64,000 nt of DNA. Source: Haliotis cracherodii (lineage: Eukaryota). The notes beneath the pieces were generated by a model. It saw nothing but the letters and a program-made list of their open reading frames with translations, ran no database searches and had not been told where the DNA came from. This document shows, piece by piece, positions 24,880-63,249 of the stretch. Location: assembly GCF_022045235.1 (NCBI RefSeq), contig NW_027266264.1, positions 35,898,001-35,962,000 of the forward strand, written 5' to 3'. Every line of letters begins with the position of its first letter. Position 1 is the first letter of the stretch. The position numbers were made by a program, and so were the translations under genes.

Positions 24880-25029
24880 GCTGGAACAGAAGACAGACAT
24901 TATCACTTATCAACTACCATGTCTGGACCAGACAAGTTATAGCATGAGCAATGATTCACACCGTTGGGGTACAATGACACGTAATCTGCTAAGTCAAAGC
25001 AGATCCACTAAGGTGCATATAATGTAAAT

Positions 25030-25189
25030 ATGGTGTGCGTGCGTGCATGTGTTTCAGGGGGGGCGTATAATGTACGTATGGTGTGTGTGTGTGTGTGCGT
25101 GCGTGCATGTGTTTCATGGGGGGCGTATAATGTACGTATGGTGTATGTGTACGTGTGTGCATGGGGGAGGATATAATGTACGTATGGTG

Positions 25190-25246
<57 letters not shown>

Positions 25247-25486
25247 GTGCGCGCGCGCTGGCATATAATGTACGTATGGTGTGTGTGTGTGCGTGAGAGC
25301 GTGCGTGCGTGTGTGTGTGTGGTATAATGTACGCATGGTGTGTGTGTGTGCGTGCGTGTGTTTGTGTGTATGGTATGGTGTGTGGTGGGGTTGCGGTGGT
25401 TGAGTGGGTGTCTATGTGTTTGTGTATGATTGCGTGCGTGACTTTATAAGTAATTTGGTGAGTGAGTGAGTGAGTGAGTGAGTGAG

Positions 25487-25542
<56 letters not shown>

Positions 25543-25548
25543 TGAGTG
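25030..25548. repeat. Compound GT/GCGT/GAGT microsatellite with ~60-bp higher-order unit
   Basis: Repeated tataatgtacgtatgg followed by (gt)n(gcgt)n; source of the HTHARTHA ORFs. Confidence 0.9.
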
Positions 25549-25726
25549 TTCATAACCTAATCTTAACTTTAAACATTGTGTTAGTATATATGTCTTAATT
25601 TACCTTATCCAGATCATGATGTTATAATTTGCTATTATGTCTAAAAGTCTCGTTTGTTTGTGTATGTGTTTGTGTATGTGTTTCAGTATGAAGTGTATAT
25701 GACATGTGACACTATAATAAACATTA

Positions 25727-25727
<1 letters not shown>

Positions 25728-25757
<30 letters not shown>

Positions 25758-25763
25758 TCTCTC
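25728..25763. repeat. (CT)n microsatellite
   Basis: Direct reading. Confidence 0.9.
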
Positions 25764-27001
25764 GATAAGCATAGGTTGCTGGGGATCTATTCTAACCCAG
25801 AATCCCAACAGGAATTTAGCAACCATGAATTAAACTACAGTATTGGTTTACTTAGCAACATATACTACTTGTGGACATGTTTACTTCTGACAGTTTCATG
25901 CAAGCGTCTTTACCCATTTGAGTGAGTTGTCAGTCCCTGCGTCTGGTAGAAAGACAGAATACCTTTTGACTGTACTAAGTATTATCTGACCCCTACACAA
26001 CATGTCCGAGTTTGCCTCTAATGTTACAAACACATAAAAAATAACTTGACTACTTAATGAAAGTGATATGACTTTCTAAATATAAACATTAGTCAGACAG
26101 AACCATTATCGGCCTTGTTTTGTTGGGGTAGTATTACCTCAGCACTTCTCATGGGCTTTACACAATGTGACTATAATATGACACAGTTATCTCATAGCAT
26201 GTGCTGCTTCAACAGCTGGGCAACAACAAAAAGCAGAAAATGTTGTCAAACATTCTTTCAGGGAAAAAACACCTCTCTATTTGATAAGAAACCATAGGGT
26301 CGAAACTACTGGCATTTATCAATGTCTGGTATGCTGCTGGTCCTACAGCAATGCTCACCTGCTGATACTACCCGTCAGAAACACAAGCTGTTCACACGGT
26401 TCTTATAAATATTACAGCTTCCGGGTACAAAACAACTTCCTGTTCATAGCTGAGACTTACAACCCAGTAACACTGTTACATTATTGAACAAAAACTGCCT
26501 GGATCCAAACTTCTATCCTTAATGAATCGGGGTTGCAAGATCAGAGTTACACCTTTCATAATCTTTGACTCATGATTTGCAATTTGGATTTACTTTATTG
26601 ACACCTTCACAGAATCAAATTTCTGGTAAAAAATACTGTTGCATATTAAAGTTACTGAAATTTGAAACTGACACATAGAACTATTTGAGCTAGCTAGCCA
26701 GCAATCTAGACATCGGAGGGAACTTGAATATCTCATCTTGCAAGTTTTATTCAACATGTTCAACCAAGCCCAAACTAACATTCCAGCACATCAAGGTTCT
26801 TAGTCCACCATACCAACTGCCAAACTGAGAATCTGGTGTCAGTGGTTACAGTTAATTCTAATCACAATAGGCCCCAAAATACTTGTGTTTCAGGCAACAA
26901 TAATATAAAATAAATATTTTAATTATGTTTAACATTGATGGCTTGTTTAGAACTTATGTTAATTATGTTTCTCAAATTTGTAGGCCCAGGCAGCGACAGT
27001 T

Positions 27002-43944: not shown

Positions 43945-46768
43945 CTATTCTGGCACATCTACAATCAGAGGACAGACGAACTCGGAATGTCGGATTCCAA
44001 GGGAATGGACAGCAGCCTTTGGTCGGTTGATGACAACTCTCTCTGGGCAATGAGCTCCAGGCCCTGGCTTCATCGTACTGTCCCCGGGCATGTAGCTGCG
44101 TCTCCTCAAGGAGTACAGGGGGGCCCTGTCCTTATAGAGGTCGGGGACGGTGGCATTGTAGTTGCCAGGTCCGGGGGCCTTGGCCATGTCATCCGCGTAG
44201 CCGCCGATCATCGACCGTGCCGTCATGGAGTAGCCGGGAGATGATTGCTTGTCCGGCTGGAATGCCCCCAGAACCTTTGGTAGGGTGTATTTGTTCGGGG
44301 CTGGGTTGCCATCACGTTTACGGTAGCGGGTCCGGGAACCGATGGAATGCTTAGGGGCATTTTTCTCCCCCTGTGGGTGAACCCGTTCCGGCATGTAAGC
44401 TCTTGGTGATGGAGTCTTGAACGTGCCTTTAATGTGAGAAAGCATTATTATTTAGTGATGCTTTACTTATGTTATCTTGCCATCAATACAATATAAATCA
44501 GTTTATTTCCCACGTCGACATTATTGTTATTATTGTTGTTATACATACCAAGATATGTCTGTCTGGCAAGCAGGGAATAGGCAGGGGTGCCGTCTCTACC
44601 CGACCTTGTTATGCTCGGGTCGATGAAATACGCCGGACCAGGACTGCATTCCTTCTTTGTGGCTGTAGAAACAGCACGTACAAAATTTATGACAAACAGT
44701 GGGTTGTTATAAAGTCACCCAGATACATAATATGATGTATAGTTCAGTTTAGAAAATTAAACAACATAATGACCTACACGTGCACAGGTTTTCCTTGTAT
44801 GAAACACCTTATTGCACGCAATTTTCCCTTGTTACACCTGCACACATGATCCACTTAATGAAGCTCCTATAATGTTCTTTAAAATGTGAAGTACATACTC
44901 ACTCACTCACTTTTGGTGAAATGTGAGCATAGAAATTACATGCATCCTTCAACACCGCTAGGATCCACTGGTCTAAGGGCCAGTGAGTTCGCAAAAGGTA
45001 TGGATTGAAATCCGTATTACCAGCTACAGATCTTCACCTGAGAGAATAATTTCACTGCAGGGGTTCATATTGGTAAAATTTGGCTGACTACTGTTTAACA
45101 CTCGCTCAGAACCATATGTCCAAATTACATAAAATCCTCGGCATTAAGGGGATAAAAAGGACTTGTCGACTCGAGTCTGGTATCTCAGTTGGCTAGCACT
45201 AGAAGTCTGGACTAGTACAAGCAGTCACACATTGACACGTGAATGCACGTCGCAAAACAAATGAACTTATCTTGAACGCAACGTTAGTCCCCATTTCACT
45301 CCACTTATTTTGTGGTAAGACCCGCACAAAATATGGATAGAGTGGTCAACGTGTTATTTGATGGAATGCGTCATTGTACCCCTGACAGCGTCCATCGAAG
45401 CTCATGCTATCAACCAATATACACATTCTCAGTTATAGAGGCGCCGAGTTGAAAACAAATATATATATCCAGGAACAGCAATCACAGAGACAGTGACATC
45501 AAAGTTATGAAAGGTAGGACCTATTGATAAATGCCACCCTCACAGTGGGATAAGAATCAACCCTCGTCTTCTGCTATGTTTCCGCTGCTCAAACTATATA
45601 TAAGACATAAAATGGCCCCAACTCCCCAATAACATAATAGTAGTCACCTGTTTATATCGACACTCCAAAAAGAAGATGAATGACTACCAACAGAATTAAG
45701 TGCAATTGGCCAAGTGGATTAGTAACACCCAATATAACTGCAATGATCTAATGATAATCTAATGCTGCAATAAAAACAAACTCTAGATTTCCTATCCGCA
45801 AAAGCACATCCCCTGTTCGAGTGAACAGCTGTTGTGTTCTGCATCGTCAGTAAATACGTGACACAAAAGCACATATTTGATATTTAATGTCAGTTACAAT
45901 CAAATGCAATCGTTTACGTATTTTGGCATGATCGGTAGCTCCGTGTAGAACATGTTAACGTGTAAATGTGTTTGATCCTGGACCGAGTAACATTAACTTA
46001 GTATTTTAACGGTAACTATGCCAACTAACCGAAGTCCCCGAGACGACGTCCAAACGAGTAGGCAGGTCTGGTATACTTTGTGAAGTCATGACCATTGAAT
46101 CCACACGTAGAAGGCAAGGCATAACGCCCAGGACCGGGACCTGTAGTAAATAGATATGTAATTAACACCTAAGTAACTATATGATATTCACGATTAATAT
46201 ATCCATATTTACGACGTGACTAAAACCATACATAACGAAACCTGAGTGAAATCGACAAGACATAAAATATAATATGCAGGATGCGTCTTCTTCATGTGAT
46301 TTGATAAAGCTGAACTCGTATTTCCACTGGTAGCTTAGACCAACATTTATACCCAGAAACGAAATTATATTATTTAAAAAAAATTATAAACAAACTACAA
46401 AATAAAACCCACATGAGTTCAGAACAAAGCTAAATTTTAGCCTAGAGCTGAGTCAATCTCAGCTTGCCAAATCAATCTAAACTTTTGTTGGATTATTTTA
46501 TTAATTTTTTCTCTAATGTCTGGTAGCAGTACATGGTTTTTTTCACAAATTAAGGGGTATGCCGGATGCCTGGAGGTAGCAAGTTGGCACCTCAGTAGAG
46601 GTGAGATTAAGGTGCAGGCTGTTGCTCCCCGTAGAGACGCGATAAACTGGACTTACTGATAATGACACTGAGTGCTAAAGTTCTAAGTATATAAAACAGG
46701 TATTAAATTCACTCACCCCTCTGTCTAGCAGCAATGGGGATATTCTTCTTACTCTTGACAGACTGCAT
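43945..46768 (-). CDS. ODF3: Outer dense fiber protein 3 / CIMAP1-like (SHIPPO PGP-repeat protein)
   Basis: Exons 46768-46717, 46140-46030, 44662-44549, 44426-43945, in phase. PIAARQRGPGPGRYALPSTCGFNGHDFTK..PAYSFG, SPGPAY, PAPNKY, PGPGNY, GDSTMKPGPGAH, C-terminal SLGIRHSEF. Confidence 0.9.
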
Positions 46769-48669: not shown

Positions 48670-51600
48670 CAATCAATCAATCAATCTTTATTTCAAGTAC
48701 TGAAAAGGCCATAGGCCTATAGTACATATATACATACAGTAGCAATGGGTGCAATAGGAATTACATATATCGTAACAAAATATCACATCTATAATGCAGA
48801 GGATCTGATGTTCATTGCATGATATCTATACATTGAAAGATATTTTGTGACTGTTTCATTTTGGGATGACATGAGGATATAAAATTTGTCTATTCTAGGA
48901 TTCAGATAAAAATAGTTATGTATGTATTCTTTTCTGATATTTGCATACAATGGACAGACTAGCAAAAAATGGTATTCATCTTCTATCTCTTTGCAAGTAC
49001 AATATTTACACAATCTGTTTTCCCTTGGTATCGCTAAATGTCTACCTTTTTCTATTAGAAGGTCATGAGAACCACATCTGAAACGGGATAGTGCTGTTCG
49101 GAATTTCTTAACATTTATATCCAAAAGATATTTTTCGGTCAGAATGAATGATTTAAAACAGGTGTAATGCTTTAACTTATTATGTAAGTTTAGTGAAGAG
49201 TACCACTTTTGAAAATACATATCTTTTAGCCTTTGTCTTAAATTATATATGAAACGATCTGGTACTGTTACATGTTGCTCTCTCCAAATGTACTCATACC
49301 CGCAAGATTGGAGTATCTTTTTGACACCCGAGGCCCAGTTATTTTTACCTCTGCTATCGTAAAGAATCATCATGTTATAGCATTTCTTTGGGAATCTGGT
49401 ATTTGGCATTTTAAGCAATTTTATCCAATATTTTATTACTTTTATGTAACTGAATATATACATTGGGTATCTCCCACATTCCCCGTAAACTGTAACATTT
49501 GGAGTGTTGGAATTTACTCCTAAAAATCTTTTATACGCAGATAGATGTACCTTCTCTATTGTATCATAGTTCTCTAGGCCCCAGACCTCAGCACCATAGA
49601 GTAAAATAGGACTGATCTTAGTGTCGAAAATCTTAGAGAATGTTTCAAAGCTAATATTTCCAAGGGGTTTTAGGTTTTGTAAAATGCCAATTAAAATCTT
49701 TTTGGCTTGTAGTGCGGCTTTGTTGCAATGCAGTGACCAAGTAAGTCGATTTGTAAAATGTACCCCCAAATATTTGTAACTTCTTACAACCTCAAGTTTT
49801 TCACCTTTGTATAGCCATTTTTCTCGTTTTGATAATTTCCCTCCATTTTTGAAAACTACAACCTTTGTCTTATCGATATTGACCTTCAATTTCCATTTGT
49901 TACAATAATACTCAAGTTCATTTATTAACTTTTGAAGTCCAGATACTGTGCTCGAGAACATAACTATATCATCAGCAAAAAGGAGTAGGAAAAGTTTAAT
50001 AGTTTCTGGATGGAGTTGGATACCCTCGTTACAATTTTCAGATATTTGTATCGAAAGTTCATTTATGAAAAGTGAAAACAGGAATGGACTTAGAATACAT
50101 CCTTGTCTAACCCCAGTATTACAGTAGAAGGAATCAGATAAGGTGTTATTGTTTCGAACACAGACCTTCACATTGTGATATATACAACATAGTAATTTAC
50201 CAATTTTACTACTGATACCTTGAGATTTGCAAAGGGACCACAACATGTTTCTGTTAATTGAGTCAAACGCCTTAGCAAAATCAACAAATATAGCATACAT
50301 TTTTTCTCCTTTTCGTGCTAAATATCTCTGTACAAGTGTCTGCAATACAAATACATTATCAATTGTAGAGTATCCATGCCTGAAACCGGCTTGTGCTTCA
50401 TTTATCTTATTAAAGGAATCTGTCCAAAATACTAAACGTTTGTGTATAATACTGGTAAAAATCTTACTGAAAACACTCAAAAGAGTTATACCCCTATAGT
50501 TATTGGTGACATTAGTTGATCCCTGTTTGTGCAAAGGAATTACTATCCCCAGAGTCCACTGTTCTGGAAAATAAGTCTTTTCAAGCATAACGTTAAAAAG
50601 AATTTCAAGGTAGGGGAGGAGAATATCGGACGAATATTTAAAAAATTCAGGAATCAAATTATCTTCACCAGCTGCTTTATTGCTTTTTAAGTTTGCAATG
50701 CTTTCTGAAATTTCATTTCTTGTTATAGGTGAATCAAGAATATCTGAAGTTAACTGACAAAAAGAGTTATCAAATACATTCCATTCGTCGATATCAAAAC
50801 ATCTTTCCTCGTTCTCTGTAGAAGTTGAAAACAGATCCCTGAAATAGTTAAACCAATCATCAATTGGAATATTGTTTTGTGTATAACGATTAGTGTTTAG
50901 CCCTTTAAGAGTGGCCCAAAATTGTTTAGAGTCGCGCATACAATGTTCAAGTTTTTCCTGTTTCTCTTTGAAAAAATTCGTTTTCTTTTCTCTGCATACA
51001 CTATTATATTTATTTCTAATATAATTATACTCATATAATGAGTTATTATCCTTTTTTCTTCTAAAATTGTTTAAATATTTACATCTTTCCTTTTTGAGTA
51101 GCTCACATTCACGGTCAAACCACTGTTGACTAAATGTGTTAGAAGTACACACTCTTTTCATGTCGCTTGCTGCCGTGCACAAGGCCTCTGACATGTATCT
51201 AACACTTTCGTCTATATTGTGTAACACTTCGTCAACAGCCTTTTCTAATAAAGAGTAGCATTCACTGCTCAACAAGTTATACATAAATTGGTCAGCTTTA
51301 TCATTGACCCAAACGAATTTGGAAGCCTTCTTATTACCATGAGCTTGCACGGGTTTAGTCTGCACAGAAGTATATAAGCTCGCCATGACAGGAAGATGAC
51401 AGGATTCCGTGCGTGATACAATGGTGAAATTACAGCATACGTCAAACAACCCAGATGAACAGATTATGTAATCTATGACGCTAGCACCTTGATGGCCAAT
51501 AAACGTATAGTCCCCAACTTCTGAGTCTGACCCACATCTTCCATTCAAGATATGTATATTTAAGATACTGCATAAATTTATCAAACTTTTTCCAAAGTTG

Positions 51601-52375
51601 TTTAACACATTATCTGCTGACGCTCGTACCATGTTAAAATGGTCGAGTAGAAAACTATACACGGAAGAATTATCATTTTCTAAATATTCAAGAATATCAT
51701 CTTCAACAAAATCCGGCTCAGTACCTGTGCGTGCATTGAAATCTCCACCTAACATAATATAATAGTTGCCGCAGTGAGAAAGAACATCTAGTAGCTCCTC
51801 CTGCAACAATAGCACACCGTTACTACAATCAGGTGATAACGCACTGTACCAGCGTGACGATTCTGGGTGAATATACACACATGAGTACACTACATCCTTA
51901 TCTATATTAAACATGGTTTTGTCTAATAACACAAATATTCCACTTTTACGGATTTTTGTCCATTTCACAAAATTCTCATACCTTTTTCTTATAAGAAGTA
52001 CTATTCCACCTGAAAGGCGGCCGAAGTCAGATATTTTTTCTCCATGTTTTGTTATAACCTTAAAATCTGGAAATATGGATAGTAAGTCAATATCTTTGGA
52101 CCAGGATTCTGTCAATCCAATGATGTCGCATTTACATATAAAGCTTACAAAGTCACGATCCTGTAATTTAGCCATCAGCCCTGATACATTCCAAAATAAA
52201 AATTGTACATCCTTGTTGATAGTTCTGTGGGGTACACTTGTTTGAAGCACCCGTAAATTGACATGGCCCTGGCCACACCCCTATCTCACAGCCTTCCGAC
52301 CAGGGGTCTATGTTTCCGGGTATATGGTCCGGGTAAACAGGATTCCACTGGAGGTGGAGTATTTATTGAAACTTG
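48670..52375 (-). mobile_element. Non-LTR retrotransposon (APE-RT LINE, RTEX/CR1-like), probably 5'-truncated just upstream of ORF2
   Basis: Intact ORF2, short 3'UTR with a stem-loop (48697-48725), AATAAA and a (GATT)4 tail at 48670-48686. The 5' boundary is approximate and no TSD was found. Clade assignment is tentative. Confidence 0.85.
48789..52250 (-). CDS. LINE ORF2: AP endonuclease + reverse transcriptase + C-terminal Cys/His motif
   Basis: 1153-aa open frame: WNVSGL, LTESW, GGDFNART, SVIDYI, NYRGITL, QAGFR, FVDFAKAFDS, GVRQGCILSP, LFADD, YKYLG, CKYC..EDEYHFLLVC. Confidence 0.95.
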   Translation of the reverse strand: MLQTSVPHRTINKDVQFLFWNVSGLMAKLQDRDFVSFICKCDIIGLTESWSKDIDLLSIFPDFKVITKHGEKISDFGRLSGGIVLLIRKRYENFVKWTKIRKSGIFVLLDKTMFNIDKDVVYSCVYIHPESSRWYSALSPDCSNGVLLLQEELLDVLSHCGNYYIMLGGDFNARTGTEPDFVEDDILEYLENDNSSVYSFLLDHFNMVRASADNVLNNFGKSLINLCSILNIHILNGRCGSDSEVGDYTFIGHQGASVIDYIICSSGLFDVCCNFTIVSRTESCHLPVMASLYTSVQTKPVQAHGNKKASKFVWVNDKADQFMYNLLSSECYSLLEKAVDEVLHNIDESVRYMSEALCTAASDMKRVCTSNTFSQQWFDRECELLKKERCKYLNNFRRKKDNNSLYEYNYIRNKYNSVCREKKTNFFKEKQEKLEHCMRDSKQFWATLKGLNTNRYTQNNIPIDDWFNYFRDLFSTSTENEERCFDIDEWNVFDNSFCQLTSDILDSPITRNEISESIANLKSNKAAGEDNLIPEFFKYSSDILLPYLEILFNVMLEKTYFPEQWTLGIVIPLHKQGSTNVTNNYRGITLLSVFSKIFTSIIHKRLVFWTDSFNKINEAQAGFRHGYSTIDNVFVLQTLVQRYLARKGEKMYAIFVDFAKAFDSINRNMLWSLCKSQGISSKIGKLLCCIYHNVKVCVRNNNTLSDSFYCNTGVRQGCILSPFLFSLFINELSIQISENCNEGIQLHPETIKLFLLLFADDIVMFSSTVSGLQKLINELEYYCNKWKLKVNIDKTKVVVFKNGGKLSKREKWLYKGEKLEVVRSYKYLGVHFTNRLTWSLHCNKAALQAKKILIGILQNLKPLGNISFETFSKIFDTKISPILLYGAEVWGLENYDTIEKVHLSAYKRFLGVNSNTPNVTVYGECGRYPMYIFSYIKVIKYWIKLLKMPNTRFPKKCYNMMILYDSRGKNNWASGVKKILQSCGYEYIWREQHVTVPDRFIYNLRQRLKDMYFQKWYSSLNLHNKLKHYTCFKSFILTEKYLLDINVKKFRTALSRFRCGSHDLLIEKGRHLAIPRENRLCKYCTCKEIEDEYHFLLVCPLYANIRKEYIHNYFYLNPRIDKFYILMSSQNETVTKYLSMYRYHAMNIRSSAL

Positions 52376-53985: not shown

Positions 53986-54832
53986 GTATATTTATATATG
54001 TTGTTTGAATGAATCTATTTTGTGTATAAATTGTTTGTTCTTGTACAGTATGTTGAGTGTTCATTCTGTTCTACAGACATTTATACTTATAGTAAAAGAC
54101 TACATGTCTATCTTTTCTATCTACCATATATAATTTTGGAAATTTTGCCCTAATTCATTTTTGTTTTGTCTTGTTTTTCTCTTAGTCTATGAAGACATTT
54201 GCAACATTTGATTTGAATTACATGTGTATCTAAAAGTTAAAAAACGCCCAGAATCCAAACCTCCGGGCCTATTTGGATGGAACATTTTGAGTTGGGTGAT
54301 TAGTAGCACAAATAATAAATAGGAAAAGATAGTTTTGTTCTGATATGAATATTGAAGTCTTTCAGGGGAATTTAACTAAAATGAGGGCATTTGTCTTTAG
54401 ATTTCGAGCTAAGCTGTATCAGTGAACATGGTTTGTGCCCATTATGATTTGTGATAGTTTGTCCAAAAGAGCTGTGTCAGCTACCTAGAACTTTCTTGCG
54501 GGAATGGAATATCTGTTTCGTTATCCGTTATTGGCTCTCTTAATTTGCCGTTGTTTGATATTTCACATTATGATTAGCTGTGACACGTTATTTCACAAGT
54601 ATCTTGTTGTAGTGAATTATCAAATATATTACACATTTTCTGTGAATTGTCTTTTTTTTACTCTTGAACCGTCATTATTTGTTTTCCCGTTTGTTTACCT
54701 CATAACCAGGAATACTAGTATAGAGTAAACTTAGGAAACAGTTGCCTACAATGCATGTGATGATCTGTCTGACAGGTTGTTACCGAGTTTACATGTTATA
54801 ATAATATGAGATGTGGTCCTAGTTTATACATG

Positions 54833-55674
54833 TATCATGGTTAACATTTATACTAAGTTATCTTATAATAATTAGATCTACATCAAGTGCTTTTATGAGT
54901 TATCATGGTGTAATATTTATACACCATTGCATATAATTATAGTTTAGCAAGTAATAATTATCATCAGGTAAAATGCATATATAAAATATCAGTAGTTTCA
55001 GTTACAGCTTTTTAGATGGTTGCTAGACTAAGGTATCAAGATCCCATCTCCCAGACAAAGGATATTTATTTAAGTATATCTGTCATCACCTACCGGGGTA
55101 TATTAGAATAACATTACTTCAATTAAGACTCATTAAGGATTAGCCCCGTACAAGCTCGTCTATAGTGCATTAAGGATTAGCCCCCATACAAGCTCGTCTA
55201 TAGGGCATTAAGGATTAGCCCCACACAAGCTCATCTATAGTGACACCCTAATCTCTTTCAAGCATCCAGTAAATATGTCAACAAGATTAGTGCCAGTCCA
55301 ACAGGATTAACAGGATTTAGTATTCCCCTCTGTCCAGCCATCCATTTAGCATAGGACACAACCAATCGTGTATCAACCAATCACATTCCTTTCTATTGTT
55401 CAAACTTTCATTAAATACGTACTGTAGCCAAGTTCTAGCAGAGAAGGGGTTTGACTCTCTTACCAAGCAGACCTCTCTCCCACAGCCCAGAGTGTGTACC
55501 GACTCTCTGTGGCACCCTCAGTTATTATCTAAGCATAAATTGTAAATTGTTAAATGTTCTTGTAAATAAAATTGTGATTAGTCTCCTGTGACTCTGGCTC
55601 TTTGCTGACTAATTCCCCAAGAAAACCAGCACGTCATTTGGAAGGTATTGTTCACCTAGAACAGTTCCATGATA
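54833..55674 (+). repeat. 5' LTR (842 bp)
   Basis: Direct repeat of 62355-63196 with no difference seen by eye. TATCATGG...CCATGATA ends, two CCAAT boxes, AATAAA at ~55565. Confidence 0.95.
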
Positions 55675-55945
55675 ATTTGGCGGAGAATCATCGTTTTCGG
55701 AACCACGGAGTCCAGGAACTACCTACAACCAGCTACAAGAACCCATTGGAGGACATGTCCAACCGTGATCATCTGATGGAATAACAAGCAAGCTGCATCT
55801 ACCTCTGACCTCAACACTGGATTAAAGACAACCAACTCCTGCAAAGACACCAACAACGAAAGAAAAAGTCTTCAAATATTGTAAGTACTACATTGTTGAT
55901 TACTTGTCTTCCTTTAATTTAGTACGGTACATACTAATAGGTGTC

Positions 55946-58900
55946 ATGGCAAATATGGAGTCTGGTATGGAAAGTAACTTCGAAAGTGAAATTCCAACAG
56001 TGTCTTTAGTTACGCCCCTTGCCAAAAGTGTAATTCAGGCAAAATTTGGCACAAAAACAACAAATTGTTTAGTAGATACAGGGGCATCCATTTCTTGTAT
56101 TTCGTCTGCTTTTCTGAGCACAGCTTTTGAAAACCTTACTCTTGGAAACTCACCCTTTCCACAGGTTAAAGGTGTTGGCGGCGAATTGCATAAAGTGTTA
56201 GGTTCAGTTGTGTTAGATTTTGTCATTGAGGATCAGGAATTTTCTCAAAGATTCTATGTTCTGCCTACACTACCAGAAGCAGTGATACTAGGTGAGAACT
56301 TCCTTGATGACAATGATGCAGTCTTAGATTATAGCTGTCATTCCTTGATACTTAACAACAGCACCTCAGATAGGCAATATATCAATTTCATAGCCAATTC
56401 AGTGCAAGAGATTAGTGGATTAGCAAAAACAATAGATCAGATTTACATCCCCCCTCAGAGTGAAATTCATTTCAAGGTTAGACTATCAGAGGTCAAAGAG
56501 GATTCCCTCATCCTGATTGAACCCATTGCTTCCCTCACTGCTCATTCTGAAGTAGCAGGTGGTAGAACTCTTTCCAAAGTGAAAAGCAAAACTGCTACCT
56601 TTAGGCTTATGAATCCCTCCCAAGAAGAAAAAGTTCTTGACAAGGGTACAGTTGTAGGCAAATTTAGTTACATTGACAAAGACTCTGTTTTTGAAATCGG
56701 CTCTGACCAACCATTCATCAGTACCGTTAACACCGACAATGAGAAGAGAGACAATGACACCAGGGATTATGTTAAAATTGCACAAGAATTAGGATTTGAT
56801 TTGACCAATACACAACTGACTCCAGACCAACGACACAGACTACTTAGATTCTTGGGACAAAATAGAGACATGTTTTCAACAAGTCTTGCAGATTTAGGAA
56901 AGACTGACATGCACCAACATATCATTGACACTGGCGACCACCCACCCGTTAAGTGTAGACCATATCGCCAATCTCCTCATCTCCAAAAAGTCACTGAAGA
57001 ACTTATAGATGATTTTCTGAAGTATGATTTAATCGAGGAGTCTACTTCTATGTATTCAGCTCCCATTATCCTAGTCAAGAAACGCGATGGCTCATATAGA
57101 TTTGTTTGTGACTACAGAAAGTTGAATTCTGTCACTTTACCGATGTCATGGCCTCTTCCTGTTTTTGATGATGTTGTTGATAACATAGCCAATGCACAAG
57201 CTAAGATCTTCTCAACTTTAGACCTTGCTAATGGCTTCTTCCAAGTGCCATTACATGAAGATTCAAAGCATAAAACTGCTTTCGTCACCCATCAAGGCCT
57301 TTATCAATTCAAACGTTTGCCCCAAGGTTTGACAAATTCTCCACTTTGTTTTCAACAGCTCATGAGCAAAGTGCTAAGAAAATTACTTTTTAAGGTTGCG
57401 CTGATCTACATTGATGATTTGATAATTTACAGCAAAAACTTTGAAGAGCATCTCCAGCATTTGGAGCAAGTATTTTACTATCTGAAACAGGCAAAATTGA
57501 CACTAAGGCCATCCAAATGCAATTTTGCAACAGACAAAGTTTCTTTTCTGGGTCATGTTTTATCATGTGGAGGTGTTCAAGTTGATGACAAAAAGATTGA
57601 AGCAATTAGAACCTTTCCAGTGCCCAAATCACAAAAGCAGATCCGCTCCTTCTTAGGTCTCACGAACTTCTACAGGAAGTATGTGAAAAATTACGCTCAC
57701 ATAGCGCTTCCACTGAATGCCTTGCTAAAGAAGCATTCAGAGGCAGAAGTAGGAAAGAAACCAAAGTTCCAATGGTCACTTGAGTGTGATCAGGCATTCA
57801 ACACACTCAAACATGCTATGAGTAATACACCTGTTCTGGCTTATCCAAATTTTGACAAAGAATTTCTTCTCGCAACTGATGCCAGCGATATGAGCATAGG
57901 TTTTGTTTTGAGTCAAAAAGACGAGAAAAATAATGAACATCCAATAGCTTTTGGTGGTAGAGCTCTACATGGCAGCGAAAAGAACTGGAGCATTACAGAA
58001 AAGGAAGGCTTAGCTCTAGTTGAAGCCATTAGATCCTTTCGTCCATACCTTGCAAATTCCAAATTCACAGTCTACACTGATCATATAGCATTGAAATGGC
58101 TGAAATCAATCAAGGATGCCACAGGTAGGTTAGGGCGATGGTCTTTGGAACTTTCTACCTACACTTTTGACATTGTTCACCGCAGCGGCAAAGCCAATGG
58201 GAATGCCGATGCTCTCTCACGTAGGGAATACGAGGAAAATATTAACTGTAATGATCAGACAGAAGAAGATGCTGAGAAAACAGTCTTCTCAGTAACTTCA
58301 ACTCAGCAAAGCAAATCAACTAGCAATACCACAATCTTGCCAAACACCCATTCATCCACACGGGTCACACAGACAACTCAGACTGAGGATATTTGCACAC
58401 CTATTGTCAATCACTTAGAATCAGACACACAGACAACACATTGGTCAGTCACCTTTGAATATGAAGAGGATTATCAGTCAGTACCAGTTAATGTTGTTGC
58501 AGCATTACATGCTACAAATGCTGATGTTACCCAAGACACATTGGTTGAAGTAAGTATAAAAGAACATCCAAATTTACGTCACCTACAAAGGATTTGTCCA
58601 GATTTCATCCAAATCTTTGACTACAAAGAGGATGATGTCCTTCCACAAAATGAAAAGGATCGTCAAAAGATTCTTATTGAAGCCAATACTTTTGAAATTG
58701 ATGAAGGCATCCTATACAGATTTGTTCCACAAAGACAGAAAGGCCATGCAGACAAGTTCATTAAACAGCTGGCAGTCCCAAGAACCCTCAGAAATCAAGT
58801 CCTGCAATCCTATCATGACTCAGAGTTTGGCGGTTGCCACCATGGGAAAGAAAGGATGCACAACACCATGAGACCTAAGTACTACTGGCCCAAAATGTAC

Positions 58901-61129
58901 AGCGAGATTGCTACTTATGTCCAGACATGTGAGGTATGTCAACAGACCAAGAGGCACTACCATGCTAAGAAGGCACCACTTCGTCCACTACCTGTAGAAG
59001 AGGTCTTCACCCGATGGCACGTTGACATTCTCGGTCCCCTGCCAACAACACCAGATAAGTACAAGTACATTTTGGTTATCACAGATGCATCATCCAGATG
59101 GTGTGAAGCCTTCCCACTTCGGACCCAAGAAGCCAAAGAAGTAGCAGATGTTCTCGTCAGAGAAATATTTTGTCGGTATGGCGCACCTAGGACCTTAATT
59201 TCAGACAGAGGTCAGAACTTCATGTCCAAACTTATCAAAGCAATTTGTGAACTTTTGGCAATTAAATTTACCCATACCAGCCCATACCATCCTCAAACAA
59301 ACAGCTGTGTAGAAAGGCTCAATTCCTATATCAATCAGTCACTAAGAGCCTATTGTAACAAGTCTCAAAATGATTGGCCCCGTTTTATTCCTGGCATCAT
59401 GATGGCCTATCGGATGGCCCCAAATTCATCAACACAAAAATCCCCATATGTCATGCTTTTTGGCCGAGAAATGAGAGCTCCACAAGATGTAGCATTAATT
59501 CCAAAAGAAAATTTAGGCCACAATAACAAAAGTTATCTTTCCAATTTGCTTGAGGAGCTTGAAATCACTAGAACAATCGCAGCTGAAAACACTGCTCGGG
59601 CTAAGGAGGTGTATTCAGAACAATATAATAGAAAAGCTAAAGAACCAGAATTCGCCCCAGGTCAAAGAGTTTGGCTTTACTGTCAAAAAGTTGAAAAAGG
59701 CCTTTCCAACAAATTAACCAAAAAGTGGTATGGTAGCTATTATATCGTCCATACAGGTCCAAATTATACCTACAAACTACGCCGAAGTTCTGACGACAAA
59801 ATACACAAACCACTGGTCCATGCCAACCGTCTGAAGCCATATTTTGATCCTGCTGATCGTCCACAGTATCCTCCAGAACCATACCTCAATAACCCCAGTG
59901 ACATAGATTCAGGAGTCATGGATGACAACGAGGAACCAGTCAATGATACTCAGATTGACACCAACAATTCCCCATCAACAAGTTCAACTTACCAGGCTAC
60001 TGATCAATCACCTCCACAACAGAAAGGTAAGAAGGTCAATTCCAAAACAAAGGCAGGTACTTCCAGCAACAAGAGTCCGAAGCAAAAGACCCCAACAAAG
60101 AAGAAAAACCCTGCTTCAACTTCAAGTACAACAGAAAAACCTACCAGTCCCACGGCAACAATGAAGGAAAATCATGCCACACCAGGTCCTAGTGCTCCAA
60201 CCAAGGTAAATGAAAAGGTAAACAAAGGGAAAAGGGGAGTGAATAGTAAGCATCACCAGCCCAAATCCAGAAAACAACCCGACGACAGCCAGGTACAACC
60301 TCCAAGTCCAACATCAGGTAATCAAACCAAGGATATCCCTCAAGTCTTCAATCCAGAGGACATCCACTCAATTGTTAGTTCCAAGAGAGCAAATGGCAAA
60401 ATGTACTACAGAGTAAAATGGAAGGATCCAGAAAGAGGAAACACATGGGAGTATGGCAGCAGCATTCCAGACTCCATTCGGAGAGAATTTCACCTCAAAA
60501 GAAGTATGTCAGGAAAACGACGAAAACGTCCACTGAAGAATCATAAGTTTTTCGACCAAAAGGAAACAGCACAAGACAATAAATCAGTCAATGTTCTGTC
60601 AGGTAATTCAATGTCAGGGAATGTCCAGCAAGTCAACACCAAACCATGCATAGAATTAGATGTCAAACCATATCTGTTTTTTCCAAAACACCTACGAAAA
60701 ATAGATCATAAAATAGAAAGAGTTCTGGGCATTGAAATTATTCAAGGAGACTGCTATGTCAAGGTCTTATATAAAGGATTTCCTGATACTGACTTCACAT
60801 GCTATTTTGAAAGTGTTCCTCCCCACCTCATACAGCGCTACCTTGATGATAGCTGGGAGGATCTCCGTAATTGGTCCTGTCTAGAAGATAATCCTCGATA
60901 TGATCCAGAGGAAGCACCAATTTATAAATCCAAAAGGGTTATTTTTCCACATGAAGACTTTGGAAACATCAACACCTTTTACTACCGTATTTCACTCACA
61001 GACATTAGTCCCCATGGACCATACCAGGATCAACTCGCCGTACATACCGAACAATGCCAATTGAACATATTCTTGATCAAAATACAAAATCTCCTGAATA
61101 AACGGTGCAAATCACGAAACAACTATTAG
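55946..61129 (+). CDS. Gypsy Pol: protease - RT - RNase H - integrase - chromo-like domains
   Basis: First ATG at 55946. LVDTGA, YRFVCDYRKLN, YIDD, ATDAS..TDH..ADALSR, H..H..CEVC, VDI..SDRG..VERLN, and YYRVKWKD..NTWE. Confidence 0.95.
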   Translation: MANMESGMESNFESEIPTVSLVTPLAKSVIQAKFGTKTTNCLVDTGASISCISSAFLSTAFENLTLGNSPFPQVKGVGGELHKVLGSVVLDFVIEDQEFSQRFYVLPTLPEAVILGENFLDDNDAVLDYSCHSLILNNSTSDRQYINFIANSVQEISGLAKTIDQIYIPPQSEIHFKVRLSEVKEDSLILIEPIASLTAHSEVAGGRTLSKVKSKTATFRLMNPSQEEKVLDKGTVVGKFSYIDKDSVFEIGSDQPFISTVNTDNEKRDNDTRDYVKIAQELGFDLTNTQLTPDQRHRLLRFLGQNRDMFSTSLADLGKTDMHQHIIDTGDHPPVKCRPYRQSPHLQKVTEELIDDFLKYDLIEESTSMYSAPIILVKKRDGSYRFVCDYRKLNSVTLPMSWPLPVFDDVVDNIANAQAKIFSTLDLANGFFQVPLHEDSKHKTAFVTHQGLYQFKRLPQGLTNSPLCFQQLMSKVLRKLLFKVALIYIDDLIIYSKNFEEHLQHLEQVFYYLKQAKLTLRPSKCNFATDKVSFLGHVLSCGGVQVDDKKIEAIRTFPVPKSQKQIRSFLGLTNFYRKYVKNYAHIALPLNALLKKHSEAEVGKKPKFQWSLECDQAFNTLKHAMSNTPVLAYPNFDKEFLLATDASDMSIGFVLSQKDEKNNEHPIAFGGRALHGSEKNWSITEKEGLALVEAIRSFRPYLANSKFTVYTDHIALKWLKSIKDATGRLGRWSLELSTYTFDIVHRSGKANGNADALSRREYEENINCNDQTEEDAEKTVFSVTSTQQSKSTSNTTILPNTHSSTRVTQTTQTEDICTPIVNHLESDTQTTHWSVTFEYEEDYQSVPVNVVAALHATNADVTQDTLVEVSIKEHPNLRHLQRICPDFIQIFDYKEDDVLPQNEKDRQKILIEANTFEIDEGILYRFVPQRQKGHADKFIKQLAVPRTLRNQVLQSYHDSEFGGCHHGKERMHNTMRPKYYWPKMYSEIATYVQTCEVCQQTKRHYHAKKAPLRPLPVEEVFTRWHVDILGPLPTTPDKYKYILVITDASSRWCEAFPLRTQEAKEVADVLVREIFCRYGAPRTLISDRGQNFMSKLIKAICELLAIKFTHTSPYHPQTNSCVERLNSYINQSLRAYCNKSQNDWPRFIPGIMMAYRMAPNSSTQKSPYVMLFGREMRAPQDVALIPKENLGHNNKSYLSNLLEELEITRTIAAENTARAKEVYSEQYNRKAKEPEFAPGQRVWLYCQKVEKGLSNKLTKKWYGSYYIVHTGPNYTYKLRRSSDDKIHKPLVHANRLKPYFDPADRPQYPPEPYLNNPSDIDSGVMDDNEEPVNDTQIDTNNSPSTSSTYQATDQSPPQQKGKKVNSKTKAGTSSNKSPKQKTPTKKKNPASTSSTTEKPTSPTATMKENHATPGPSAPTKVNEKVNKGKRGVNSKHHQPKSRKQPDDSQVQPPSPTSGNQTKDIPQVFNPEDIHSIVSSKRANGKMYYRVKWKDPERGNTWEYGSSIPDSIRREFHLKRSMSGKRRKRPLKNHKFFDQKETAQDNKSVNVLSGNSMSGNVQQVNTKPCIELDVKPYLFFPKHLRKIDHKIERVLGIEIIQGDCYVKVLYKGFPDTDFTCYFESVPPHLIQRYLDDSWEDLRNWSCLEDNPRYDPEEAPIYKSKRVIFPHEDFGNINTFYYRISLTDISPHGPYQDQLAVHTEQCQLNIFLIKIQNLLNKRCKSRNNY

Positions 61130-61264
61130 CTGTATCTTGTTATGTTTACTTGTGTCCAGTCTTTTCACTATGGGTTGCCAGTTGAGAACAAATGGCATCA
61201 GCCTGATCATCTGAGTTATTTGTATCACAGCAAATTTTGAGCATTGACCTGATCAACCAATCTC

Positions 61265-61700
61265 AAAAGCGAAGTGAAATGACACAAAGCAAACCATACT
61301 GCGAATTGAAACCCAAACCGCACCGAAGCGAAGCAAACCATACTGCGAATCGAAACCCAAACCGCACCGAAGCGAAGCAAACCATACTGTGAATCGAAAT
61401 CCAAACCGCACCGAAGCGAAGCAAACCGTACTGCGAATCGAAACCCAAACCGCACCGAAGCGAAGCGACCATACTACGAATCGAACCCAAACCATACCGA
61501 AGCGAACCTAAACCGTACCGAAGTGAAATGGCACAAACCAAACAATACTGGGAATCGAACCCAAACCGTACCGAAGCGAACCCAAACCGTACCGAAGCAA
61601 AATAAACCAAACCATATCGCATTGAACCGAAGGAAAATCAAAGCGAAACAAACCAAACTCAAATAAAGAAAACTTAACAACCGAAATGAACCAAAACAAA
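61265..61700 (+). repeat. ~42-bp A/C-rich tandem array inside the Gypsy 3' non-coding region
   Basis: Unit gaaacccaaaccgcaccgaagcgaagcaaaccatactgcgaatc-like, decaying to the right. Confidence 0.85.
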
Positions 61701-62354
61701 GAAAAGGCAAACCAAATAGTTACGAAAACTAACAATGATATACACCTTTTGTATACCGTATTAATGTAACAAATCAATGCACTTGTTATATGCACATGCA
61801 CATATATGTATATATAATGCGTCTAATGATTGTATCCAAAAATAGAAGGATATTACTATTTTTCTCATGATATACTTTTGTAATTTGCCGCCAATACATT
61901 CTTCCTGGCCATGACACCGTTTAGTAATAATTATGTACTGATCTTTTACATCATAATTATCATATTTGTTTTATTTTCTAGTTAATACAGACAAACTGAG
62001 GAAGTATTTATATATGACATATTATTTGAACATGCTAACTCTCTTTTCTTTGTTTCCATGTAAAACCTCCATGGACACAGCCTACTATCTTGCAACCCCA
62101 ATCCAGGATGTGGAACTCAAGGCCTCCTACATCACCCATAAAACCACCAGTACAGAGTGCCAAGACAAGCCAGCTCCACATCCAGATTCCCTGATGACAG
62201 CATTTTTATATCATGTTTCCTTATATCAAAGAGACGCTATAATAATTGTTATTTACTATACTACCAGTTTAACTTAATACATTGTCCATCTAAGCCATAA
62301 TTATTTTAATTTTTACACGTTTGGGGTCCAAACTTTTTCAGACGGAGGGGAAGT

Positions 62355-63196
62355 TATCATGGTTAACATTTATACTAAGTTATCTTATAATAATTAGATC
62401 TACATCAAGTGCTTTTATGAGTTATCATGGTGTAATATTTATACACCATTGCATATAATTATAGTTTAGCAAGTAATAATTATCATCAGGTAAAATGCAT
62501 ATATAAAATATCAGTAGTTTCAGTTACAGCTTTTTAGATGGTTGCTAGACTAAGGTATCAAGATCCCATCTCCCAGACAAAGGATATTTATTTAAGTATA
62601 TCTGTCATCACCTACCGGGGTATATTAGAATAACATTACTTCAATTAAGACTCATTAAGGATTAGCCCCGTACAAGCTCGTCTATAGTGCATTAAGGATT
62701 AGCCCCCATACAAGCTCGTCTATAGGGCATTAAGGATTAGCCCCACACAAGCTCATCTATAGTGACACCCTAATCTCTTTCAAGCATCCAGTAAATATGT
62801 CAACAAGATTAGTGCCAGTCCAACAGGATTAACAGGATTTAGTATTCCCCTCTGTCCAGCCATCCATTTAGCATAGGACACAACCAATCGTGTATCAACC
62901 AATCACATTCCTTTCTATTGTTCAAACTTTCATTAAATACGTACTGTAGCCAAGTTCTAGCAGAGAAGGGGTTTGACTCTCTTACCAAGCAGACCTCTCT
63001 CCCACAGCCCAGAGTGTGTACCGACTCTCTGTGGCACCCTCAGTTATTATCTAAGCATAAATTGTAAATTGTTAAATGTTCTTGTAAATAAAATTGTGAT
63101 TAGTCTCCTGTGACTCTGGCTCTTTGCTGACTAATTCCCCAAGAAAACCAGCACGTCATTTGGAAGGTATTGTTCACCTAGAACAGTTCCATGATA
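62355..63196 (+). repeat. 3' LTR (842 bp)
   Basis: Same length and apparently same sequence as the 5' LTR. Confidence 0.95.
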
Positions 63197-63249
63197 CATG
63201 CAACAACGTAAACTTGACAATGATATGGTTTAAATCACTATCAGATTGG

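What the first reader, a model, noticed from the sequence alone, without database searches (positions are those of the whole stretch)
54833..63196. Recently transposed Gypsy element with an intact Pol but no gag: possible pol-only half of a bipartite retrotransposon
Seen: only ~270 bp separate the 5' LTR end (55674) from the first Pol ATG (55946), and the protease motif LVDTGA follows ~40 codons later. No capsid or zinc-knuckle ORF appears in any frame or strand between the LTRs. Yet the LTRs look identical, PBS, PPT and TSD are intact, and the Pol frame of over 1700 codons has no stop. Known: Ty3/Gypsy replication needs Gag particles, and gag-defective or gag-only partners exist in plants (BARE-2, TR-GAG). 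Inference: this form moved very recently using Gag in trans. Pol has its own ATG in good context (gtcATGg), which suggests a stable pol-only lineage, perhaps paired with a gag-only element sharing the LTR/PBS.
Basis: partly seen in the sequence, partly recalled or inferred. Interest (0 to 1): 0.88.

Follow-up and report, generated by a model that had tools for sequence, protein, structure and literature searches.

The report
Young gag-less Gypsy retrotransposon in abalone
A very recently inserted Ty3/Gypsy retrotransposon in an abalone-like genome has intact enzymes but has lost its entire capsid (gag) gene, so it is most likely an ordinary deletion derivative that cannot move on its own; nothing available here shows a two-part transposon system.

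Summary
Two 842-bp LTRs (54833-55674, 62355-63196) are 100% identical and flanked by a 4-bp duplication (CATG). A TGG-starting PBS-like site and a polypurine tract are present. One uninterrupted ORF (ATG 55946 to stop 61129, 1727 aa) encodes PR-RT-RNaseH-INT-chromodomain plus a roughly 190-aa lineage-specific tail.

No gag exists. The LTR and the pol ATG are 271 nt apart. Pfam finds no capsid. A gag profile built from relatives scores nothing in the element (best E 0.62), yet it finds gag in 22 of 22 control relatives.

Relatives for which DNA could be fetched (30-44% Pol identity) normally carry a 300-650-aa gag abutting pol. In the five best-matching readthrough-type loci (37-44%) it is in the same frame behind a single stop. 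This copy is therefore a gag-deleted derivative of a gag-stop-pol family. The host is an abalone (a host exon is 95% identical to Haliotis rufescens).

The claim of a stable pol-only lineage paired with a gag-only partner could not be tested. The closest protein (69% identity) begins with the same MANME, but that fits either model.

Best reading: a non-autonomous deletion derivative made during or shortly before its last reverse transcription. Moderate-to-low interest.

The parts
54829..54832 (.). Target-site duplication, left copy (CATG)
   Evidence: flanks end and begin with CATG
54833..55674 (+). 5' LTR, 842 bp, termini TATCATGG...CCATGATA. Contains TATATAAA at 54978, AATAAA at 55565 and 3 x 38-bp tandem repeats at 55131-55242.
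55675..55945 (+). Leader, 271 nt, with no gag. PBS-like TGGCGGAGAATC at 55678-55689. In-frame TAA at 55823-55825, followed by 40 codons without an ATG. GTAAGT at 55881 and ...TTTAG ending at 55922 form a 42-nt intron-like stretch (unverified).
55946..61129 (+). pol ORF, 1727 aa from the ATG (context gtcATGg), no internal stop
56027..56317 (+). Aspartic protease (LVDTGAS)
   Evidence: RVP, gag-asp_proteas and Asp_protease_2, residues 42-138
57074..57559 (+). Reverse transcriptase core (YIDD at 57407)
   Evidence: RVT_1, E 1e-38
57773..58162 (+). RNase H
   Evidence: RT_RNaseH and RT_RNaseH_2, E 1e-35
58775..59293 (+). Integrase: H2C2 zinc finger and catalytic core
   Evidence: Integrase_H2C2 E 8.5e-19; rve E 1e-15
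60362..60472 (+). Chromodomain at the integrase C-terminus
   Evidence: Chromo E 1.1e-4, 22.4 bits, below the 25.1 cut-off; weak PDB chromodomain matches; pLDDT 81-86 for this stretch, three strands plus a helix.
60545..61126 (+). Lineage-specific C-terminal extension of about 190 aa, fold unknown. Shared only with P0001, P0247 and P0248.
61130..62354 (+). 3' untranslated region, 1.2 kb, with 44-bp and 74-bp tandem repeats at 61287-61614. Polypurine tract GACGGAGGGGAAGT at 62341-62354.
62355..63196 (+). 3' LTR, identical to the 5' LTR
63197..63200 (.). Target-site duplication, right copy (CATG)

Best explanation
This is a non-autonomous, gag-deleted copy of a chromodomain-bearing Ty3/Gypsy LTR retrotransposon in an abalone (Haliotis-like) genome. 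Its family normally reads LTR - leader - gag - one stop codon - pol - LTR. Pol is then made as a Gag-Pol fusion, either by reading through the stop or, in other branches, by frameshifting.

In this copy the whole gag ORF, roughly 1.1-1.4 kb, is missing. The leader now runs almost directly into the first pol codons.

The most likely origin is an internal deletion made at the RNA-to-DNA step. Reverse transcriptase may have switched template inside a particle built from Gag and Gag-Pol of a full-length parent or sibling. Alternatively, an already deleted RNA may have been packaged by a sibling's proteins. The deleted cDNA kept the PBS, PPT and both LTR ends, so it integrated normally and produced identical LTRs and a 4-bp duplication.

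The copy is so young that its pol ORF has had no time to decay. An intact pol therefore need not mean that pol is under selection in this copy.

Shown: the anatomy, the absence of gag, the presence of gag in relatives, and the host. Inferred: the time and mechanism of the deletion, and dependence on a helper.
For: - The anatomy and 100% LTR identity show a recent, complete integration event.
- Gag is absent by ORF scan, Pfam, tblastn and a gag HMM with positive controls.
- In relatives that have upstream DNA, a 300-650-aa ORF abuts pol. It lies in the same frame behind one stop in L001, L003, L004, L005, L024, L026, L029, L082 and L094, lies in an overlapping frame in others, or is fused.
- Five of the six upstream ORFs scanned match Retrotrans_gag (four above Pfam's own cut-off), two of them also zf-CCHC (one above cut-off); L002's has no Pfam match but the gag HMM detects it at E 5e-13.
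- The pol N-terminus aligns with the post-stop region of those relatives. DTGA lies 43 aa after the ATG here and 44-97 aa after the gag stop in them. The missing block therefore corresponds to gag and little else.
- No second LTR copy, no related pol fragment and no capsid-like gag lies elsewhere in the window.
Against: - Only one copy could be examined, so the deletion cannot be dated relative to the insertion.
- The closest protein, P0001 (69% identity, 1730 aa, another sample), starts with the same five residues, MANME. P0002, P0123 and P0124 start within a few residues of that point. This would also fit an older lineage with its own pol start.
- The deletion is unusually tidy. It leaves an ATG in good context at the head of pol.
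Confidence: 0.58

Rival explanations
1. Stable pol-only lineage. Gag-less elements persist over evolutionary time, express Pol from their own ATG, and rely on Gag from a gag-only or full-length partner that shares the LTR, PBS and packaging signals.
For: - The pol start MANME is shared with P0001 at 69% identity.
- The catalytic cores are far better conserved than the linkers between the two: RT 80%, RNase H 89% and integrase core 89%, against 36-64%.
- A conserved C-terminal extension is found only in this small clade.
- The Kozak context is good.
- There is a plant precedent. Papaver Retand sub-lineages lack GAG, and others hold mainly GAG and PROT (bioRxiv 10.1101/2025.03.30.646164).
Against: - No second copy, partner element or gag-less relative was actually seen.
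- A gene caller would start pol at the first Met after a gag stop, so the shared start does not discriminate.
- Conservation of the pol cores is expected in any active lineage, with or without gag.
- Six upstream ATGs precede the pol ATG.
- Pol made without a Gag fusion is normally not carried into particles (my own knowledge).
Confidence: 0.15
2. Deletion after insertion, or an assembly error. A full-length element inserted, and gag was then removed from the chromosome or dropped by the assembler.
For: Nothing in a single copy excludes it. The identical LTRs and the TSD would be unaffected by an internal deletion.
Against: - With 0 differences in 842 bp of LTR, little time has passed for a 1.1-1.4 kb genomic deletion.
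- The window has no N and no sign of a join at the junction.
- Deletions made by reverse transcriptase are frequent per replication cycle (my own knowledge).
Confidence: 0.15
3. Retro-copy of a spliced sub-genomic RNA. A donor in the leader was joined to an acceptor just upstream of pol, which removed gag. The spliced RNA, still carrying PBS and PPT, was then reverse-transcribed and integrated.
For: The missing block matches gag almost exactly. The leader contains a consensus donor, GTAAGT, at 55881, and a pyrimidine-rich ...TTTAG ending at 55922.
Against: - A used splice junction leaves no donor or acceptor behind, so the motifs seen are not the junction.
- They could be chance in a 38% GC sequence.
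- The best-matching relatives fetched as DNA have gag and pol in one frame separated by a single stop, an arrangement that needs no spliced pol mRNA if the stop is read through.
Confidence: 0.07
4. Gag function is present but unrecognised. For example, it could lie in the basic low-complexity stretch or in the C-terminal extension of the polyprotein.
For: About 190 aa at the C-terminus have no known fold, and both models were of low confidence. A lysine-rich stretch precedes the chromodomain.
Against: - No Gag or capsid signal in Pfam, the HMM or PDB sequence searches.
- The predicted secondary structure is three strands plus a helix, not the all-helical capsid pattern.
- Relatives that have a separate gag also have the low-complexity stretch and the chromodomain.
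Confidence: 0.02

Closest known systems
Chromodomain-bearing Ty3/Gypsy (Metaviridae) LTR retrotransposons of molluscs with a gag-stop-pol layout. Examples: loci L001, L003, L005, L082, L094; proteins P0003-P0014, including Pinctada imbricata entries.
   Same: Same pol domain order, with 37-45% Pol identity over the whole length. Same conserved domain between PR and RT. Same chromodomain followed by a KRRK...FF motif at the integrase C-terminus.
   Different: Those elements carry a 370-460-aa Gag (Retrotrans_gag, with or without CCHC) directly upstream of pol. This copy has none, and it adds a C-terminal extension of about 190 aa.
Retand sub-lineages lacking GAG in Papaver (Group II; bioRxiv 10.1101/2025.03.30.646164)
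   Same: [quoted passage not shown] The authors class them as non-autonomous.
   Different: Those are plant, non-chromovirus elements, shown as multi-copy sub-lineages. Here there is one animal copy and its lineage status is unknown.
TR-GAG (PMC4350172) and BARE2
   Same: Non-autonomous LTR retrotransposons that depend on a partner for missing proteins. What I say of BARE2 is from my own knowledge.
   Different: TR-GAG keeps only gag, which is the mirror image of this copy. BARE2 has a defective gag start but keeps the gene. Both are plant elements.
Incomplete copies within ordinary families, e.g. TARE1 in tomato (PMC3701649)
   Same: [quoted passage not shown] The LTRs start with TA rather than TG.
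   Different: TARE1 is a Copia-like plant element. Its incomplete copies were not reported as young with an intact pol.
Foamy-virus style Pol expression (my own knowledge)
   Same: Pol is translated from its own ATG rather than as a Gag-Pol fusion.
   Different: Foamy viruses keep gag and use a spliced pol mRNA. Nothing here shows that this Pol is made or packaged.

Membership tests
Ty3/Gypsy (Metaviridae) LTR retrotransposon | Pol domain order PR-RT-RNaseH-INT | tested here: met
   domains at residues 42-138, 391-552, 624-753 and 958-1130, in that order
Ty3/Gypsy (Metaviridae) LTR retrotransposon | Direct LTRs flanked by a 4-6 bp target-site duplication | tested here: met
   842-bp LTRs, 100% identical; TSD CATG
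Ty3/Gypsy (Metaviridae) LTR retrotransposon | PBS next to the 5' LTR and PPT next to the 3' LTR | tested here: inconclusive
   The PPT is clear (GACGGAGGGGAAGT). TGGCGGAGAATC lies 3 nt after the LTR. No matching tRNA could be checked: none in the window and only three in the related loci.
Ty3/Gypsy (Metaviridae) LTR retrotransposon | 5'-TG...CA-3' LTR termini (usual, not universal) | tested here: not met
   termini TATCATGG...CCATGATA
Autonomous LTR retrotransposon | Encodes Gag (capsid, with or without a zinc knuckle) | tested here: not met
   no gag. The positive control found gag in 22 of 22 relatives.
Chromovirus | Chromodomain at the integrase C-terminus | tested here: met
   Pfam Chromo E 1.1e-4, 22.4 bits, below the 25.1 cut-off. 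AF2 pLDDT 81-86 with three strands plus a helix. Weak PDB chromodomain matches. Sequence support alone is weak.
Chromovirus | RT/INT phylogeny places it inside the chromovirus clade | not tested
   No tree was built with reference chromoviruses
Gag-lacking non-autonomous sub-lineage (as Papaver Retand Group II) | Several copies share the same gag-less structure through one shared loss event | not testable with these tools
No relative above 44% identity was found in the DNA collections.
Gag-lacking non-autonomous sub-lineage (as Papaver Retand Group II) | [quoted passage not shown] | tested here: met
   271 nt here. In relatives pol is preceded directly by a gag ORF of roughly 300-650 aa (0.9-2.0 kb), apart from the fused cases; LTR-to-pol distances in relatives were not measured.
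TR-GAG / LARD / TRIM | Internal region with gag only (TR-GAG) or with no coding capacity (LARD, TRIM) | tested here: not met
   The internal region encodes a complete 1727-aa Pol
Troyka | 5'-CG...CG-3' termini and 3-bp TSD (PMC12440569) | tested here: not met
   TA...TA termini and a 4-bp TSD; for the definition

The most novel reading that the evidence does not exclude
A small clade of mollusc Gypsy elements would be an evolutionarily stable pol-only lineage. Its members would be this copy, P0001, P0247/P0248 and perhaps the P0002 family. The clade is marked by a unique C-terminal extension after the chromodomain and by a conserved pol start. These elements would translate Pol from their own AUG and borrow Gag from a partner. 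That would be an animal example of a split, two-component LTR retrotransposon.
Probability: 0.12. Interest if true: 0.75.

Novelty: new member of a known kind. Interest (0 to 1): 0.3.

Why it matters
As it stands, this is a clean, datable example of a non-autonomous LTR retrotransposon that lost gag but kept a complete pol. It is useful for annotating abalone repeats and as a marker of very recent retrotransposition in that genome.

It would matter more if a genome-wide survey showed many such copies with selection on pol. That would show that the coding functions of an LTR retrotransposon can be split between partner elements in animals, and it would raise the question of how a Gag-less Pol gets into particles.

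The conserved C-terminal extension of unknown fold is a small open question of its own.

Tried and rejected
The DNA around P0001, P0005 and this protein could therefore not be fetched. This was the main obstacle.
The JGI contigs of P0002 and P0123 are not in that collection.
- This exact Pol is not in the 15-billion-protein collection.
- I tried to infer gag presence on P0001's 6763-nt contig from length. The remainder after pol, about 1570 nt, fits either leader plus a 1.2-kb 3' UTR as here, or gag plus short UTRs. I rejected this as uninformative.
I did not run it. At 20-27% gag identity the 5-residue word filter would probably miss the target, and a blank would say nothing.
- Structure prediction of the C-terminal part, run twice, gave low confidence outside the chromodomain (mean pLDDT 47 and 39). 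No fold search was run on those models.
- tRNA scans of the window and of 23 loci gave nothing usable to identify the primer tRNA.
- Rfam found no family in the window.
- The zinc-knuckle hits at 6652-8986 are CCHC exons of a host gene, not a retroelement gag. Only HMM positions 367-407 match.
- Alternative LTR boundaries with TG...CA termini were examined and rejected, because the flanks would then not form a direct duplication.
- dN/dS could not be computed, because no nucleotide sequence of a close relative was available.


Full report
**Observation.** A direct repeat of 842 bp occupies 54833-55674 and 62355-63196 with no mismatch. Identity stops on both sides at those coordinates. The flanks carry CATG on both sides, a 4-bp target-site duplication. 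The LTR ends form an 8-bp inverted repeat, TATCATGG...CCATGATA, so the termini are TA...TA and not the usual TG...CA. I tested alternative boundaries that would give TG...CA, and they fail because the flanks would then not be direct repeats. A purine tract, GACGGAGGGGAAGT, abuts the 3' LTR. TGGCGGAGAATC lies 3 nt after the 5' LTR. Inside the LTR are TATATAAA at 54978, AATAAA at 55565 and three 38-bp tandem repeats.

**The ORF.** A single long ORF runs from 55904 (TTG) or 55946 (first ATG, context gtcATGg) to the stop at 61129. That is 1741 or 1727 codons. Pfam places aspartic protease at residues 42-138, RT at 391-552 and RNase H at 624-753. The integrase zinc finger is at 958-1017 and the integrase core at 1034-1130. 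A weak SH3-like match lies at 1253-1313 and a weak chromodomain at 1487-1523. The catalytic motifs DTGA, YIDD and the integrase D, D, E are present.

**Is gag really absent?** Only 271 nt separate the LTR from the pol ATG, and the longest ORF there has 60 codons. The 1.2 kb between the pol stop and the 3' LTR is largely 44-bp and 74-bp tandem repeats, and it has no ORF over 119 codons. Pfam finds no Gag family in the whole ORF or in its four unannotated pieces, even at E up to 10. tblastn with nine gag proteins of relatives finds nothing in the element.

I then built an HMM from eight relatives' Gag proteins (alignment A4) and searched all 179 six-frame segments of the element without filters. 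The best E was 0.62 at 2.6 bits. As a control, the same HMM found gag in 22 of 22 further relatives that were not used to build it. The E-values ran from 1.5e-71 to 0.013, whether gag was a separate ORF or fused to pol. Across the whole 64-kb window the HMM matched only its zinc-knuckle columns, in CCHC exons of a host gene at 6652-8986. AlphaFold models of the C-terminal 274 and 194 residues show a confident chromodomain (pLDDT 81-86). After it comes a low-confidence stretch of three strands, a helix, a disordered part and a terminal helix, which does not resemble a helical capsid. Gag is absent.

**What the family normally looks like.** A protein search found 275 Pol relatives. The closest is P0001 (Logan, 1730 aa, 66-69% identity, 99% coverage). 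Next comes the P0002/P0123 family (JGI, 58-59%). Everything else is at or below 45%, including bivalve entries such as Pinctada imbricata. DNA could be fetched only for relatives whose best aligned segment is 28-48% identical to this Pol (30-44% for the loci that match most of it). These came from metagenome contigs, from MAGs that evidently contain host contamination and from IMG/VR.

Wherever those loci have enough upstream sequence, a 300-650-aa ORF abuts pol. In L001, L003, L004, L005, L024, L026, L029, L082 and L094 it is in the same frame and separated from pol by one stop codon. In others it overlaps pol in another frame, or it is fused. Of the six upstream ORFs I scanned, five match Retrotrans_gag (four above Pfam's own cut-off) and two also match zf-CCHC. 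The sixth, L002's, has no Pfam match but is detected by the gag HMM at E 5e-13. The norm is therefore gag-stop-pol, most likely with readthrough.

In the alignment, the N-terminus of this Pol lines up with the residues that follow the gag stop in those relatives. DTGA is 43 aa after the ATG here, and 44-97 aa after the stop there. The missing block therefore corresponds to gag almost exactly. Upstream of the ATG the pol frame stays open for 40 codons, back to a TAA at 55823. Whether that TAA is the old gag stop cannot be decided.

**Host.** An ORF at 43948-44445 (minus strand) is a SHIPPO-repeat exon. It is 95% identical to outer dense fiber protein 3-like of Haliotis rufescens and 67% identical to that of Lottia. 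The window therefore comes from an abalone or a very close relative. It is not human sequence.

**Mechanism.** Three facts constrain the history. The copy integrated as a normal cDNA (TSD, both LTRs, PBS, PPT). It did so recently (no LTR difference in 842 bp). And it does not encode the Gag that its family needs.

The simplest account is a deletion at the reverse-transcription step, or in a recent progenitor RNA, inside particles built from Gag and Gag-Pol of a full-length element. That yields a deleted provirus with identical LTRs in a single step. It also explains the intact pol by youth alone. I give this 0.58.

A post-insertion genomic deletion or an assembly error is possible but less likely in so short a time (0.15). 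A retro-copy of a spliced RNA would explain the neat excision. The leader does contain GTAAGT at 55881 and a pyrimidine-rich ...TTTAG ending at 55922, a 42-nt intron-like unit. A used junction would not retain those signals, however, and they may be chance (0.07). A cryptic Gag inside the polyprotein is very unlikely (0.02).

The points in its favour are few:
- P0001 begins with the same MANME, and P0002, P0123 and P0124 begin within a few residues of that point.
- The catalytic cores are conserved at 80-89% between this copy and P0001, against 36-64% in the linkers.
- A C-terminal extension of about 190 aa is shared only with P0001 and with two Pol C-terminal fragments. P0247 and P0248 match at 44-49% identity in an exhaustive search of 1.84 billion representatives.

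None of these discriminates. A gene caller starts pol at the first Met after a gag stop. Core conservation is expected in any active family. The extension says nothing about gag. P0001's contig length (6763 nt) fits either architecture. A Pol made alone would also lack the Gag fusion that normally takes it into particles (my own knowledge), which makes the role of Pol donor mechanistically demanding. I give this reading 0.15 overall, and 0.12 for the full split-element version.

**Comparison with what is known.** Non-autonomous LTR retrotransposons are well known. TR-GAG elements keep only gag (PMC4350172). Some TARE1 copies lack gag, int or rt, and TARE1 LTRs also start with TA (PMC3701649). 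Papaver Retand sub-lineages fall into a GAG+PROT group, a group lacking GAG with a shortened LTR-to-protease distance, and a complete group (bioRxiv 10.1101/2025.03.30.646164). The kind is therefore known, including the idea of complementary partial elements in plants. This is a new member in a mollusc. It is not Troyka, which has CG...CG termini and a 3-bp TSD (PMC12440569).

**Limits.**
- No DNA of a close relative, and no other part of the host genome, could be searched. Copy number, partner elements and dN/dS remain untested.
- The primer tRNA was not identified.
- Both structure models of the extension are of low confidence.

**Verdict.** The element is a new member of a known kind. Interest 0.3.

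Noticed in passing
window 48789-52250 (-): Intact 1153-aa ORF of a non-LTR (LINE) retrotransposon, with an apurinic-type endonuclease and an RT domain. It lies 2.6 kb from the Gypsy insertion.
   Followed up: partly
window 43945-44445 (-): Exon of an outer dense fiber 3-like / CIMAP1A gene (SHIPPO repeats). It is 95% identical to Haliotis rufescens, which identifies the host as an abalone or a near relative.
   Followed up: yes
window 6518-8990 (+): Several short ORFs with CCHC zinc knuckles (for example 6652-6777, 7518-7622, 8882-8950). They look like exons of a host zinc-knuckle gene. They are interleaved with a tandem-repeat array at about 7768-8822 that creates a spurious 183-aa ORF.
   Followed up: partly
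window 55881-55922 (+): A 42-nt stretch in the leader has a consensus 5' splice site (GTAAGT), a pyrimidine run and a terminal AG, just upstream of the pol ATG. Its length is a multiple of three. It could be chance.
   Followed up: no
window 60545-61126 (+): The C-terminal extension of Pol, about 190 aa after the chromodomain, has conserved motifs (GDCYV, VPxHLIQxYL, SWxDL, NKR tail). It is found only in P0001, P0247 and P0248. The fold was not predicted with confidence; it may be a second chromo-like unit.
   Followed up: partly
window 61287-61614 and 55131-55242 / 62653-62764: Tandem repeats inside the element: 44-bp and 74-bp units in the 3' UTR, and three 38-bp units in each LTR.
   Followed up: no
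window 24001-26000: Local GC rise to 0.46 with positive GC skew, against a background of about 0.38. A 181-aa ORF at 25008-25553 (-) has no Pfam match.
   Followed up: no
L081-L131 (genome contigs): Many MAGs filed as bacteria or archaea hold eukaryotic Gypsy elements with gag-pol. Examples are Sedimenticola sp. TCF1, Stappiaceae, Nitrospirales, Rubritalea, Nitrosopumilaceae and a Wolbachia record. This points to host contamination or host-derived contigs in those bins.
   Followed up: no
L001, L004, L094: These contigs have identical 91-123-nt ends. They are assembled as circles of one LTR plus the internal region, a typical assembly artefact for LTR elements.
   Followed up: no
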